Of a stretch of DNA of 64,000 bases, positions 199 through 25,203 are shown one piece after another. Numbering within the stretch: the stretch's first letter is position 1; every line of letters starts with the position of its first letter. The stretch is taken from IMG/VR virus record IMGVR_UViG_3300005537_000001, positions 124,001 through 188,000 of that record; one strand, 5' to 3'. The notes under the pieces were generated by a model that worked only from the letters and a program-made list of their open reading frames with translations, had not been told where the DNA came from and did no database searches. The position numbers and the translations under genes are program-made.

Positions 199-272
199 TC
201 GCCCGTAGCTGAGTGGTTTAGCGAGGAACTCTAAATTCCGGTACGTGGGTTCGATTCCCATCGGGCGATCCA
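199..272 (+). tRNA. Amber suppressor tRNA (anticodon CUA), probably Gln-type body
   Basis: Acceptor TCGCCCG/CGGGCGA, D arm GCT/AGC, anticodon loop CT-CTA-AA in GGAA/TTCC stem, GGTTCGATTCC T arm, T73 then CCA; U1-A72 and U73 as in this phage's tRNA-Gln(CTG). Confidence 0.9.
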
Positions 273-2681: not shown

Positions 2682-2759
2682 GTCTCCGAGGCGAAGTCAG
2701 GTAAACGCAGCGACCTCTAAAATCGTTAAGAGTGGGTTCGAAGCCCACCGGAGACGCCA
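2682..2759 (+). tRNA. Second amber suppressor tRNA (anticodon CUA), amino-acid identity unclear
   Basis: Acceptor GTCTCCG/CGGAGAC, D arm GCG/CGC, loop CT-CTA-AA, T arm GTGGG-TTCGAAG-CCCAC, G73 then CCA. Confidence 0.85.
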
Positions 2760-16328: not shown

Positions 16329-16416
16329 CAGGAATTAGCTCATTGGAGATACGAGAGAGCACTCGGTTGCCGAAAGCACCGAGAGGTTGTTGGTTCGATT
16401 CCAACATTCCTGACCA
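16329..16416 (+). ncRNA. tRNA-Pro-like body with anticodon loop replaced by an extended CGAAA-capped hairpin
   Basis: CAGGAAT/ATTCCTG-A-CCA; CTCGG-T-TGC-CGAAA-GCA-CCGAG. Confidence 0.65.
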
Positions 16417-19285: not shown

Positions 19286-19379
19286 GCCGAGGTAGCTCAG
19301 AGCTGGTCAAAACCCAGCGCCGGTAGAGCGGGTGCCCAACAGCACCGCGTCGTTGGTTCGAATCCAACCCGAGGCGCCA
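19286..19379 (+). ncRNA. tRNA-like RNA: D-loop hairpin insert, 6-nt anticodon loop, GA/GA mismatches in acceptor stem
   Basis: GCCGAGG/CCGAGGC-G-CCA; GCTGG..CCAGC insert; GGTGC-CCAACA-GCACC. Confidence 0.65.
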
Positions 19380-19551: not shown

Positions 19552-19651
19552 GCCGAAGTAGCTTAGAGTGGTGCGCAAAATAAATCCACGTCGGTAGAGC
19601 GTCCACCCGGAAACGTGGAAGACGATGGTTCGAATCCATTCTGAGGCACCA
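19552..19651 (+). ncRNA. tRNA-like RNA paralogous to 19286-19379 (D-loop insert, 8-nt anticodon loop)
   Basis: GCCGAAG/CTGAGGC-A-CCA; GTGG..CCAC insert; TCCAC-CCGGAAAC-GTGGA. Confidence 0.65.
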
Positions 19652-20264: not shown

Positions 20265-20338
20265 GTCCCGTTCGTCCAATGATAAGACGACAAGTTGCAA
20301 CCTTGTAGACGCTGGTTTGATTCCGGCACGGGACTCCA
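20265..20338 (+). tRNA. tRNA-Cys(GCA)
   Basis: ACAAG-TT GCA AC-CTTGT; T73-CCA. Confidence 0.9.
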
Positions 20339-20344
20339 AATTAT

Positions 20345-20422
20345 TGGCACTTAGCGTTCAGGGTGAGTGCGCCGCACTGTTAATGCGGAACGAGACTGGT
20401 TCGATCCCAGTAGTGCCAGCCA
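20345..20422 (+). tRNA. tRNA-Asn(GTT), second copy
   Basis: CCGCA-CT GTT AA-TGCGG; CCA. Confidence 0.9.
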
Positions 20423-20429
20423 AATTAAT

Positions 20430-20506
20430 ATGGGTGTGTCAGGTAATTGGCTAACCGGCTGCGCTCCAAACGCTTCGATGGGGTTCGAATCCCTCCACCC
20501 ATGCCA
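20430..20506 (+). tRNA. tRNA-Trp(CCA) with only 3 canonical anticodon-stem pairs
   Basis: ATGGGTG/CACCCAT-G-CCA; CTGCG-CT CCA AA-CGCTT. Confidence 0.75.
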
Positions 20507-21287: not shown

Positions 21288-21362
21288 GCCGTTGTCGTAT
21301 ATTGGTAATACAGATCCTTGGTAAGGATCAAAACGAGTGTTCGATTCACTCCTGCGGCACCA
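21288..21362 (+). tRNA. tRNA-Thr(GGT)
   Basis: GATCC-TT GGT AA-GGATC; CCA. Confidence 0.9.
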
Positions 21363-21381
21363 ACAAGTAAATAAAAGTACT

Positions 21382-21804
21382 ATGAAAATACTTCTACATC
21401 CAGATCCAACTCTTAGCAAGATAAGCCATCCAATCGAAGAGATTAATGACGGCACTATCGAGCTAATCAACAACATGTTCATTACCATGAACGAAGCTGG
21501 TGGTATCGGTCTGTCGGCAATTCAGGTAGGTGTTGACAAGCAGCTGTTCATCATGAGCATCAACGGTGCCAGCTACATCTTCATCAATCCGGTTATCACG
21601 TGGAGATCTCCAGAAACTCAAACGATCAACGAAGGCTGTCTCAGTCTTCCAGGTACGTTCGTCGACATGACCCGCAGCGCTAAGATTATAGTGAACGCGT
21701 TTGGGGTTGACGGTAAGATATTTGAGGTTGAAGCAACCGGTCTCCACGCCGCGTGCATTCAGCATGAAATGGATCATCTAAGCGGAAAGACGCTGCTCTC
21801 CTAA
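21382..21804 (+). CDS. def: Peptide deformylase
   Basis: GIGLSAIQVG, EGCLS, QHEMDH. Confidence 0.95.
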   Translation: MKILLHPDPTLSKISHPIEEINDGTIELINNMFITMNEAGGIGLSAIQVGVDKQLFIMSINGASYIFINPVITWRSPETQTINEGCLSLPGTFVDMTRSAKIIVNAFGVDGKIFEVEATGLHAACIQHEMDHLSGKTLLS

Positions 21805-22457: not shown

Positions 22458-23120
22458 ATGAAGCGCATTATAGAAATTAAATCTGCCGAAGGCGGCACAG
22501 ATAGCAAGCTCTTCGCGCAAGATCTTGCCAACGCATACGTAAAGTATCTCACCCGAGTCGGCTGACTCCACCGCCGCATCGATTCGCTGACAATCGAGGT
22601 TGATGGACAGGATCTCTCAGCGCTTCACCAAGAAGCTGGTGGTCATCGAATCCAGCGGGTTCCACCAACCGAACGTTCTGGTCGCACCCACACCTCTACC
22701 GTTACCGTCGCCATCATCAACCCGCAAGAAGCTAAGCTGATTGAGTTCAACGAACGTGACTTCAGGATAGAGTGGTACTCTGGTACCGGTTCTGGTGGAC
22801 AACACCGTAACAAGCACCAAAATTCTTGCCGAATATTTCATACCCCAACTGGGACGGTTGCCACCGCACAATGTAGGAGCCGAGAAAATTCCTTGAAGGA
22901 AGCGAAGGTAAATATCCTTGAACGTCTAAACGCTCAGCTCTCCGGAGCAGCCCATCAAGCACTATCAATGGATAGGAAAACTCAGATGGGTTCCGGAGAG
23001 CGGGGTGACAAGATCCGCACCTACCGCTTCCAAGACAATATCGTCAAGGATCACAACACCGGAAAGCAGGCGCAAACCGACAAGGTGATGGCTGGAAACT
23101 TTCAACTGCTTTGGAGATAA
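22458..23120 (+). CDS. RF1-type peptide chain release factor (lacking domain 1) with in-frame TGA at codon 36
   Basis: MKRIIEIKSAEGGTDSKLFAQDL..Y..RVG*LH...EAGGHRIQRVPPTE.SGRTHTS...GSGGQHRNK...GSGERGDKIRTY; PxT and GGQ motifs; TGA 22563-22565. Confidence 0.9.
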
Positions 23121-25100: not shown

Positions 25101-25203
25101 AGAGATGTCGTATAATGGTATTACCCCGGTCTCCTAAGCACTTTCCTAAAGAGAGTTTTTAGGAAAACCGATGACGGGAGTTCGATTCTCTCCATCTCTG
25201 CCA
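25101..25203 (+). tRNA. tRNA-Trp-like gene with a 29-nt insertion in the anticodon loop
   Basis: AGAGATG/CATCTCT-G-CCA; removing 25135-25163 gives CCGGT-CT CCA AA-ACCGA. Confidence 0.7.

What the first reader, a model, noticed from the sequence alone, without database searches (positions are those of the whole stretch)
20430..20506. tRNA-Trp(CCA) with an unzipped anticodon stem: candidate UGA reader for the release factor gene
The top two anticodon-stem positions are mismatched (CT/TT) and the D arm is irregular. Established: D-arm changes (Hirsh suppressor) and shortened anticodon stems increase UGA readthrough by tRNA-Trp(CCA). Inference: this tRNA, transcribed under the attenuator, may license expression of the TGA-interrupted release factor 2 kb downstream.
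Basis: inference. Interest (0 to 1): 0.6.

Follow-up and report, generated by a model that had tools for sequence, protein, structure and literature searches.

The report
Irregular phage tryptophan tRNA, recoded release-factor
A 368-kb soil jumbo phage carries a misshapen tryptophan tRNA 2 kb from a release-factor gene that is interrupted in every relative examined by a UGA stop at a tryptophan position; the stop must be read through, but relatives show this tRNA shape is not needed for that.

Summary
Window 20430-20506(+) is a tRNA-Trp(CCA)-like gene, third in a Cys-Asn-Trp cluster. It has a perfect 7-bp acceptor stem (A1-U72), G73 and an encoded CCA. It is irregular: C27.U43 and U28.U42 mismatches, a 4-nt connector, a 3-bp D stem and a 4-bp T stem. 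Default detectors miss it (Rfam 26.7 bits against a cut-off of 29).

The stronger result is downstream. The RF1-like gene (22458-23120; no domain 1; PPT and GGQ motifs) has one in-frame TGA (22563-22565, GGC TGA CTC). That TGA sits at the G-W/F position of RF1 and is present in 80/80 and 75/75 related IMG/VR loci. Synonymous sites are saturated and pN/pS is about 0.3 on both sides. The genome otherwise uses TGA as a true stop (38% of genes). This is a conserved, gene-specific UGA readthrough site, most likely decoded as Trp.

The proposed link to this tRNA is only partly supported. Two complete relatives with the same TGA have a single canonical 5-bp tRNA-Trp(CCA). The weak-stem Trp lineage also occurs in phages without the RF. 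Mismatched stem tops are common in other tRNAs of the family. In its favour, two relatives carry tRNA(UCA). A second Trp-like tRNA, with a 29-nt anticodon-loop insertion, lies at 25101-25203.

The parts
20430..20506 (+). Irregular tRNA-Trp(CCA) gene. A1-U72, G73 and CCA are encoded. The anticodon stem has only 3 pairs (C27.U43 and U28.U42 mismatched). It also has a 4-nt connector, a 3-bp D stem and a 4-bp T stem.
   Evidence: ARAGORN relaxed; Rfam tRNA 26.7 bits, below the 29-bit cut-off; sequence; homology and synteny with L011 and the phage Trp lineage.
20265..20422 (+). tRNA-Cys(GCA) at 20265-20338 and tRNA-Asn(GTT) at 20345-20422. They lie immediately upstream in the same tandem cluster, with 6-7 nt spacers.
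   Evidence: ARAGORN and Rfam.
21337..21804 (+). Peptide deformylase gene between the tRNA and the release factor. It belongs to the same translation-related gene neighbourhood.
   Evidence: Pfam PF01327, E=5e-41.
22458..23120 (+). Truncated RF1-like class-I release factor gene of 220 codons. It has PCRF and RF-1 domains, a PPT (PxT-type) motif and GGQ. It lacks domain 1. AAGGAG lies before the ATG.
   Evidence: Pfam; NCBIfam, RF1 175 bits against RF2 111 bits, both below the equivalog cut-offs; PDB alignments to residues about 112-340 of RF1. It is the only RF-1 domain gene in the genome.
22563..22565 (+). In-frame TGA (GGC TGA CTC) at codon 36, aligned with the Trp/Phe that follows a conserved Gly in RF1. 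This is the programmed readthrough site.
   Evidence: TGA at the same column in 80/80 loci, 75/75 loci of a second scan and 78/78 unique genes. The fourth base is A in 55, G in 16, C in 8 and T in 0.
25101..25203 (+). Second Trp-like tRNA gene (A1-U72, G73, CCA end) with a 29-nt hairpin insertion inside the anticodon loop (CTCC[...]AAA). Removing the insertion would give a CCA anticodon and a C27.A43 mismatch. Excision at 37/38 would give CCU instead.
   Evidence: Rfam tRNA 45.2 bits; sequence and fold; the body is most like the family's tRNA-Trp; a homologue with a 28-nt insertion at the same site is in L011.

Best explanation
The element is a real but structurally weakened tRNA-Trp(CCA) gene of a complete 368-kb soil jumbo phage. 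It belongs to a phage Trp-tRNA lineage whose anticodon stem is never fully paired.

It sits in a translation module made of a tRNA array, peptide deformylase and an RF1-like factor. The RF1-like gene carries a family-wide conserved in-frame UGA at a Trp position.

Full-length factor can only be made when a ribosome reads that UGA through in frame. The UGA therefore acts as a gene-specific throttle or sensor that ties phage RF1-like output to the balance between UGA suppression and RF2 activity.

Any Trp tRNA can supply this: host, phage canonical, phage weak-stem, or UCA in some relatives. The tRNA at 20430-20506 may raise the yield, but it is not a dedicated or necessary licence.

Shown here: the tRNA anatomy, the conservation and selection of the TGA, and standard TGA=stop usage elsewhere in the genome.
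Inferred: Trp as the inserted residue, competition with RF2, and any contribution of this particular tRNA.
For: tRNA:
- Searches give the anatomy.
- Orthologous position with L011.
- 21 unique lineage members with 17 different, fully paired acceptor stems; all have at most 4 anticodon-stem pairs (A31.C39 in 20 of 21; the window copy has 27:43 and 28:42 open).
- No TrpRS gene in the phage, and the bacterial Trp identity elements are kept (sequence).

RF site:
- The TGA aligns with Trp of Streptococcus mutans and Thermotoga maritima RF1 and with Phe of Thermus RF1.
- Exactly one internal stop, always TGA, in 80/80 and 75/75 loci.
- pS is 0.76-0.79 with pN/pS 0.29 upstream and 0.33 downstream.
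- No in-frame start codon until 22893.

Genetic code:
- Code-11 ORFs of at least 80 aa cover 87.5% of the genome, and no recoding improves this.
- TGA is the stop of 139 of 370 ORFs.
- Coding potential collapses after TGA as it does after TAA and TAG.
- No other convincing TGA-interrupted gene was found.

Decoder:
- A Trp-like tRNA(UCA) in G001 and two tRNA(UCA) in G010.
- 4-bp-stem tRNA-Trp(CCA) reads UGA in E. coli (PMC13092985).

Not required:
- G003 and G004 have only a canonical 5-bp Trp(CCA).
Against: - There are no expression data. Only one DNA run, a soil metagenome that is probably the source, holds the sequence.
- The inserted amino acid is not known.
- The tRNA scores below both detectors' default thresholds and combines four irregularities, so it may be poorly functional.
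- Only a near-identical copy (L001) shares its exact shape, so covariation cannot be tested for it.
- The RF2-sensing role is an inference. RF1-type factors do not read UGA, so this is not self-regulation of the prfB kind.
- The first 60 nt after the TGA fold better than shuffles (mean z -1.64), but no consensus structure exists. A stimulatory element is neither shown nor excluded.
Confidence: 0.5

Rival explanations
1. The unzipped anticodon stem and irregular D arm make this tRNA-Trp(CCA) a specialised UGA decoder, and its expression is what permits synthesis of the release factor.
For: - Two top pairs of the anticodon stem are open.
- 27:43 mismatches are enriched in the family's Trp tRNAs: 12 of 33 against 105 of 732 other tRNAs (Fisher p=0.002), and against 8.2% in bacteria (PMC13092985).
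- L049 has a canonical and a 3-bp-stem Trp tRNA in tandem.
- Relatives carry a UCA anticodon.
- The gene lies 2 kb upstream of the RF on the same strand.
- There is experimental precedent in E. coli.
Against: - The same TGA is kept in complete genomes that have only a canonical 5-bp Trp(CCA) and no UCA tRNA.
- The weak-stem lineage is present in two complete and one 89%-complete phage records without the RF gene.
- 27:43 mismatches are commoner still in Lys(CTT) (71%), Sup(CTA) (50%) and Lys(TTT) (41%).
- 38% of the phage's own genes stop at TGA.
- A single C27A change alone gave no UGA readthrough in vitro, according to PMC13092985.
- A 3-bp stem was not studied there.
Confidence: 0.2
2. The tRNA is a decaying pseudogene, or an RNA with no decoding role. 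The RF's UGA is read, at low level, by host tRNA-Trp alone.
For: - It has the lowest Rfam score of all tRNAs in the window (26.7 bits, against 30-60 for the others) and is missed by default ARAGORN.
- It differs from its nearest homologues by a 2-nt insertion, a 1-nt deletion and two stem mismatches.
- Its folding energy is no better than shuffles (z=0.18).
- The other Trp-like gene is interrupted.
- The phage carries several other aberrant tRNA-like genes.
Against: - The acceptor, D and T stems differ from L011's on both strands yet still pair, and the acceptor is a perfect 7 bp.
- The identity elements and encoded CCA are intact.
- The anticodon and T loops are canonical.
- Both Trp-like paralogues are kept, in conserved order, in L011 at 64% RF identity.
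Confidence: 0.2
3. The TGA is a nonsense mutation or sequencing error, and the release-factor gene is dead.
For: TGG to TGA is a single transition at a Trp codon.
Against: - TGA is present in all of about 106 distinct contigs, at 55-100% protein identity and 35-57% GC.
- Both halves are under purifying selection, and no other stops occur.
Confidence: 0.01
4. The phage or its host reads TGA as a sense codon throughout (code 4 or 25), so nothing special happens at this site.
For: TGA at a Trp position is what code 4 would give. Some relatives have tRNA(UCA).
Against: - Reading TGA as sense gives no gain in coding density.
- 139 of 370 ORFs end in TGA.
- Coding potential drops after TGA (-0.16) as it does after TAA (-0.08).
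- No TGA occurs inside the 105 longest ORFs.
- In G001, which has tRNA(UCA), 13 of 19 local ORFs end in TGA.
Confidence: 0.02
5. The UGA is bypassed by another route: selenocysteine insertion, A-to-I editing to UGI, a frameshift, or a split protein.
For: The first 60 nt after the TGA are on average more structured than shuffles.
Against: - The alignment to RF1 is collinear in the zero frame through the stop.
- There is no CUU UGA C or SD-like cassette here, unlike L230.
- There is no consensus hairpin.
- The UCA tRNAs of relatives have ordinary, not Sec-type, cloverleaves.
- There is no in-frame restart codon for 109 codons.
Confidence: 0.03

Closest known systems
Blastocrithidia-like 4-bp anticodon-stem tRNA-Trp(CCA) (Kachale et al. 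2023; bacterial survey and E. coli test in Fakih et al. 2026, PMC13092985)
   Same: A CCA anticodon with a 7-nt loop, and loss of the 27:43 pair at the top of the anticodon stem. It is proposed to read UGA as Trp by C.A pairing.
   Different: Here two top pairs are open, leaving 3 bp. The D arm, connector and T stem are also irregular. The genome keeps TGA as a stop. Only one gene would need the activity, and no function has been tested.
Hirsh UGA suppressor (E. coli tRNA-Trp G24A). From established knowledge; mentioned in PMC13092985.
   Same: A tRNA-Trp(CCA) whose change outside the anticodon is proposed to raise UGA reading.
   Different: The defining G24A change (U11-A24) is absent; the best fold has G11-C24. 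The D-arm irregularity here is a 2-nt longer connector and an A10.G25 mismatch.
prfB (RF2) programmed +1 frameshift at an in-frame UGA (10.1101/2024.09.24.614795)
   Same: A release-factor gene interrupted early, at codon 36 here, by an in-frame UGA. Bypass of that UGA sets the factor's yield and competes with RF2.
   Different: This is zero-frame readthrough, not a +1 shift, and there is no CUU UGA C or SD-like element. The factor is RF1-type (PxT), so the sensing would be of host RF2, in trans, and not autoregulation. A true prfB-type cassette does occur in another huge-phage RF (L230).
UGA readthrough of the phage Q-beta coat gene by host tRNA-Trp, giving protein A1 (established knowledge, from memory)
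   Same: A phage gene product depends on low-level decoding of UGA by Trp-tRNA(CCA) in a standard-code host.
   Different: There the stop ends a complete protein and readthrough adds an extension. Here the stop lies inside a domain at a conserved aromatic position, so only the readthrough product can be functional.
Code-change modules of TGA-recoded phages: suppressor tRNA(UCA) + TrpRS + RF1 (Borges et al., 10.1101/2021.08.26.457843)
   Same: Phage-encoded RF1 together with Trp-type tRNAs able to read UGA. Some relatives have UCA.
   Different: Those modules are themselves written in standard code and serve genomes with many in-frame TGAs. Here the genome is standard-code, the RF1 gene itself carries the only TGA, and there is no TrpRS.

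Membership tests
tRNA (Rfam RF00005 / ARAGORN) | Score at or above the curated threshold for the cloverleaf model | tested here: not met
   Rfam gives 26.7 bits against a gathering score of 29. Default ARAGORN gives no call. It is found only with relaxed thresholds.
tRNA (Rfam RF00005 / ARAGORN) | Four-arm cloverleaf with a canonical T loop, a 7-nt anticodon loop (U33, purine 37) and GG in the D loop | tested here: met
   ARAGORN fold and sequence: T loop UUCGAAU, anticodon loop CUCCAAA, D loop AAUUGGCUA. The RNAfold MFE is also a four-way junction.
Bacterial tRNA-Trp | CCA anticodon, G73 discriminator, A1-U72 (identity elements from established knowledge) | tested here: met
   Read directly from the sequence. 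The best body matches in the family are tRNA-Trp(CCA).
Blastocrithidia-like tRNA-Trp(CCA), as defined in PMC13092985 | Exactly 4-bp anticodon stem unpinned at the top, 7-nt loop, no A9C or G24A | tested here: not met
   The stem has 3 pairs, with 27:43 and 28:42 both open. The loop is 7 nt. Position 9 cannot be assigned because the connector has 4 nt.
Blastocrithidia-like tRNA-Trp(CCA), as defined in PMC13092985 | Reads UGA as Trp | not testable with these tools
   This needs a reporter assay or mass spectrometry.
Hirsh-type suppressor | G24A in the D stem (U11-A24) | tested here: not met
   In the ARAGORN fold the D stem is AGGU/ACCG, so 11:24 is G-C.
Class-I release factor RF1 (prfA) | PCRF and RF-1 domains, GGQ, PxT tripeptide | tested here: met
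   Pfam PF03462 (3.6e-20) and PF00472 (1.5e-16). GGQ and PPT are seen in the translation. RF1 models score higher than RF2 models.
Class-I release factor RF1 (prfA) | Full-length equivalog including N-terminal domain 1 | tested here: not met
   175 bits against a cut-off of 400. The match covers model positions 107-333 of 347 and PDB residues about 112-340.
prfB-type programmed +1 frameshift | CUU UGA C slippery site with an upstream SD-like sequence, and continuation in the +1 frame | tested here: not met
   The context is GGC UGA CUC, and homology continues in the zero frame.
Stop-codon reassignment (code 4 or 25) | TGA used as a sense codon genome-wide and not as a terminator | tested here: not met
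Programmed stop-codon readthrough | An in-frame stop conserved among diverged homologues, with purifying selection on both sides | tested here: met
   78 of 78 unique genes carry it; pN/pS is 0.29 upstream and 0.33 downstream, with pS about 0.78.
Programmed stop-codon readthrough | Demonstrated full-length product | not testable with these tools
   No RNA or protein data exist.

The most novel reading that the evidence does not exclude
A large family of soil and freshwater jumbo phages uses a gene-specific UGA-to-Trp readthrough inside its own RF1-like gene as a sensor of the host's RF2-to-suppression balance. The family has repeatedly remodelled its Trp tRNAs to set that readthrough: open anticodon-stem tops, A31.C39 bottoms, a CCA-to-UCA change, and insertion-bearing copies. 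The window's 3-bp-stem tRNA would then be one such tuned decoder. It would be the first natural case of a shortened-stem tRNA-Trp(CCA) serving programmed readthrough of a single gene in a standard-code genome.
Probability: 0.2. Interest if true: 0.85.

Novelty: new variant of a known kind. Interest (0 to 1): 0.62.

Why it matters
Release-factor genes are the classic case of recoding used for feedback (prfB). An RF1-type gene gated by the stop codon that only RF2 reads would be a new cross-regulatory design. It is conserved in more than 100 phage contigs.

I found no report of it in the literature I could search. Gene callers split or drop this gene, so phage translation inventories probably undercount it.

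The tRNA side gives a natural test panel for the recently proposed rule that weakening the anticodon stem lets tRNA-Trp(CCA) read UGA. The panel comprises canonical, top-open, bottom-open, 3-bp, UCA and insertion-bearing Trp tRNAs, all within one phage family.

It also warns that an odd tRNA lying next to an interrupted gene is not evidence of a functional link. Here the comparative data argue against dependence.

Tried and rejected
- Near-identity DNA search of the phage collection found no match. A protein search found only relatives below 40% identity, so there is no cultured relative.
- Scans for other TGA-, TAG- or TAA-interrupted genes in the genome. The candidates were low-complexity shadow ORFs or neighbouring genes in the same frame. 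The counts (TAG 4, TGA 11, TAA 17) show no recoding signal. The method has low power, since it missed the RF site itself.
- Consensus RNA structure after the TGA. RNAalifold on 32 sequences found no pairs, although local folding z-scores are low. This is inconclusive.
- Promoter and terminator scan for the 'attenuator' found nothing on the plus strand.
- Sequencing-run search found one DNA run, probably the source, and no RNA.
- A loose regular-expression search for UCA tRNAs in the genome was uninformative. Absence of a UCA tRNA rests on ARAGORN at default and relaxed settings.
- LR756504.1 also has an RF1-like gene with an in-frame TGA. At 27% GC it uses too few TGAs for its code to be settled.
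- A first regular expression for interrupted Trp tRNAs was too strict. The relaxed one found the L011 homologue.
- Not run: the large protein searches, structure prediction and complex prediction. The family scans left the protein identified, and no binding claim is made.

Full report
**Setting**

The window is bases 124001-188000 of a single 368,054-bp contig. IMG/VR classes it as a complete virus with direct terminal repeats. GC is 48%. The genome carries about 50 tRNA genes and a tmRNA. The only public run that holds this stretch is a soil metagenome, probably the source. No cultured phage is close.

**The observation**

The sequence at 20430-20506 is not reported by ARAGORN at default settings or by Rfam at its gathering score. 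A local Rfam scan gives tRNA at 26.7 bits against a cut-off of 29.

The fold has these features:
- A perfect 7-bp acceptor stem with A1-U72, then G73 and an encoded CCA.
- Four nucleotides instead of two between the acceptor and the D stem.
- A D stem of three pairs plus A.G, around a normal D loop.
- An anticodon stem whose two top positions are C.U and U.U, above three G-C pairs.
- A canonical CU-CCA-AA loop.
- A 4-bp T stem with a canonical T loop.

The gene follows tRNA-Cys and tRNA-Asn with 6-7 nt spacers. Folding energy alone is unremarkable (z=0.18).

**The release factor**

The gene runs from 22458 to 23120, with AAGGAG before the ATG. It has a single in-frame TGA at 22563-22565 in the context GGC TGA CTC.

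Read through, it has PCRF and RF-1 domains. It scores better on RF1 models than on RF2 models but far below the full-length cut-offs, because the N-terminal domain 1 is missing. It has a PPT tripeptide (RF1-type PxT) and GGQ. It is the only RF-1 domain gene in the genome.

The TGA aligns with the Trp of Streptococcus mutans and Thermotoga maritima RF1, and with the Phe of Thermus RF1, just after a conserved Gly. No in-frame start codon follows until 22893.

**Conservation of the TGA**

A scan of IMG/VR found 254 related loci, of which 80 were kept. They range from 56% to 100% identity, and their contigs reach 524 kb.
- Every one of the 80 has exactly one internal stop, a TGA, at the homologous codon.
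- A second scan seeded from the most distant member gave 75 of 75, adding about 26 further contigs.
- One more came from a different search.

Among 78 unique genes the TGA column is invariant. Synonymous sites are saturated (pS 0.76-0.79), and pN/pS is 0.29 upstream and 0.33 downstream.

The preceding codon is Gly in 78 of 79. The base after the TGA is A in 55, G in 16, C in 8 and never T. From memory, U in that position gives the strongest termination in E. coli, but amino-acid constraints could also explain the pattern.

This rules out a pseudogene or a sequencing error. It establishes a programmed, zero-frame recoding site.

**Genetic code**

The phage does not read TGA as sense in general.
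- ORF coverage under code 11 is 87.5% and does not improve when any stop is read through.
- TGA terminates 139 of 370 ORFs.
- Coding potential collapses after TGA just as it does after TAA and TAG, and none of the 105 longest ORFs contains a TGA.
- Scans for further interrupted genes found nothing convincing.
- Relatives behave the same way, including G001, which has a tRNA(UCA).

**Trp tRNAs in the family**

I collected 37 unique CCA or UCA tRNAs from the relatives.
- 21 have a full 5-bp anticodon stem.
- 12 lack the 27:43 pair. The mismatch is C.U, U.U, U.C, C.A, G.A or C.C.
- The window copy lacks both 27:43 and 28:42.
- L049 carries a canonical copy and a 3-bp copy in tandem.
- L011 lacks the bottom pair.
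- The closest non-identical relative (G001, 72% RF identity) has a Trp-like tRNA with a UCA anticodon and G73.
- G010 has two tRNA(UCA) with A73, plus a CCA copy.

Loss of 27:43 affects 36% of the family's Trp tRNAs. That compares with 14% of its other tRNAs (Fisher p=0.002) and 8.2% of bacterial tRNA-Trp(CCA) in PMC13092985. These counts are not corrected for shared ancestry. The mismatch is more frequent still in Lys(CTT), Sup(CTA) and Lys(TTT).

**The lineage of the window's tRNA**

A pattern built on the 3' half of the tRNA found 28 IMG/VR stretches. Together they give 21 unique Trp tRNAs with 17 different, fully paired acceptor stems. Twenty of the 21 have an A31.C39 mismatch at the bottom of the anticodon stem, and five (the window copy among them) also lack the top pair. 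Position 31 was not fixed by the pattern. The window copy is the only one with G31-C39, and it has the two top pairs open instead. A stem of four pairs or fewer is therefore a constant trait of this lineage.

Gene order (Arg-TCG, Cys, Trp, Thr-GGT) is shared with L011, so the window tRNA is its positional orthologue. Relative to L011, the acceptor, D and T stems differ on both strands yet still pair. This argues against plain decay.

**Tests of the proposed link**

Three results argue against dependence of the RF on this tRNA shape.
1. For the complete genomes G003 and G004 I fetched the regions where the tRNA model had found matches and took a census. Each has 53-54 tRNAs, one Trp(CCA) with a canonical 5-bp stem, no UCA tRNA and no interrupted Trp gene, yet each keeps the RF TGA. 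Several other complete genomes yielded only a 5-bp copy in pattern and model searches, which are less exhaustive.
2. Of 24 records that carry the weak-stem lineage, only one has the RF gene. Two complete records and one 89%-complete record lack it.
3. An efficient UGA reader would read through 38% of the phage's own stops.

In favour of a contribution: Trp-type tRNAs with UCA occur in two relatives, and 4-bp-stem tRNA-Trp(CCA) promotes UGA readthrough in E. coli (PMC13092985). That paper notes that a single C27A change had no effect in vitro. It did not study 3-bp stems or phages.

**Mechanism I think most likely**

Ribosomes reaching codon 36 either terminate through host RF2 or accept Trp-tRNA by near-cognate pairing and go on to make the only functional product. 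The yield of the phage RF1-type factor would then rise when RF2 is limiting or Trp-tRNA is abundant.

The phage adds Trp tRNA to the pool. Weak-stem or UCA variants may raise the rate, but they are not needed. The phage has no TrpRS, and the tRNA keeps the bacterial Trp identity elements, so the host enzyme would charge it.

The purpose is inferred, not shown. It could be to hold UAA and UAG termination capacity when RF2 falls, or to time expression.

**Comparison with known systems**

- The closest analogue in logic is the prfB frameshift, but this is readthrough and would sense RF2 in trans.
- The closest in decoding are Q-beta A1 readthrough (from memory) and the short-stem tRNA-Trp(CCA).
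- The code-change modules of recoded phages combine RF1 with tRNA(UCA) and TrpRS, but they are written in standard code.
- Another huge phage (LR745208.1, L230) has an RF with a textbook AGGGG..CTT TGA C +1 cassette.
- LR756504.1 (L231) has an RF1-like gene with a TGA seven codons further on. Its code could not be settled.

I found no paper describing an in-frame UGA in a phage RF1 gene. This holds only for the library I could search.

**A further finding that qualifies 'the only Trp tRNA'**

Rfam reports a 100-nt tRNA at 25101-25200. Its body is Trp-like: A1-U72, G73, a CCA end, and best matches to the family's Trp tRNAs. Its anticodon loop is split by a 29-nt hairpin (CTCC[...]AAA).

L011 has a homologue with a 28-nt insertion at the same place. 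The ends are conserved and the hairpin differs in sequence on both arms while still able to pair.

Excision between positions 35 and 36 would give CCA with a C27.A43 mismatch. Excision at 37/38 would give CCU. Whether and how the insertion is removed is unknown. 'Enigmatic' tRNA introns are on record for Lak megaphages (PMC6784885).

**Verdict**

The inference that the RF needs UGA readthrough is confirmed and extended to a whole phage family. The claim that this tRNA is what licenses it is plausible but not supported by the comparisons, and it needs the reporter experiment.

Noticed in passing
window 25101-25203 (+); homologue at about L011:1810-1912: A Trp-like tRNA gene whose anticodon loop is split by a 29-nt hairpin insertion (28 nt in L011). 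The insertion site and ends are conserved and the hairpin covaries. Splicing, if any, is unknown, and the anticodon could be CCA or CCU depending on the excision point.
   Followed up: partly
window 19286-19379 and 19552-19651 (+): Two paralogous tRNA-like genes with 24-29 nt hairpin insertions in the D loop, tandem G.A/A.G mismatches at acceptor positions 4:69 and 5:68, and C instead of U at position 33. Rfam scores are 30.3 and 35.8 bits.
   Followed up: no
window 16329-16416 (+): A tRNA-like gene with a 12-nt anticodon loop. Relaxed ARAGORN calls it 'tRNA-???' with a 2-nt anticodon. All other arms are regular.
   Followed up: no
window 199-272 and 2682-2759 (+); relaxed ARAGORN adds a third outside the window at G000:C1:110919-111001: Two to three amber-suppressor tRNAs (CUA) in a genome that shows no excess of in-frame TAG and also encodes an RF1-type factor, which reads UAG. 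Relatives also carry one or two. Their purpose is unexplained.
   Followed up: partly
L085 (G001:C1:190515-190591) and L130 (G010:C1:about 199800-200050): Opal-suppressor tRNAs in relatives that use the standard code. One is Trp-like with UCA, G73 and a C27.A43 mismatch. The other two are a tandem pair with UCA and A73.
   Followed up: partly
L230 (LR745208.1) and L231 (LR756504.1): Other huge-phage truncated release-factor genes are also recoded. L230 has a prfB-type AGGGG..CTT TGA C +1 frameshift site. L231 has an in-frame TGA seven codons after the W/F position.
   Followed up: partly
L233-L260 (IMG/VR loci): A widespread phage tRNA-Trp(CCA) lineage with a conserved A31.C39 mismatch at the bottom of the anticodon stem (20 of 21 unique sequences). 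It is found in phages with and without the RF gene.
   Followed up: partly
window 22566-22625 and the homologous stretch in 40 relatives: The 60 nt after the TGA fold more stably than shuffles (mean z -1.64, against -0.1 to -1.0 elsewhere in the gene), but no consensus structure was found. The window copy has a TCGATT...AATCGA stem starting 21 nt after the stop.
   Followed up: partly
outside the window: G000:C1:90242-90646: A phage-encoded tmRNA (tag ANDAFFGEELRLAA). This is another ribosome-rescue and termination function in the same genome.
   Followed up: no
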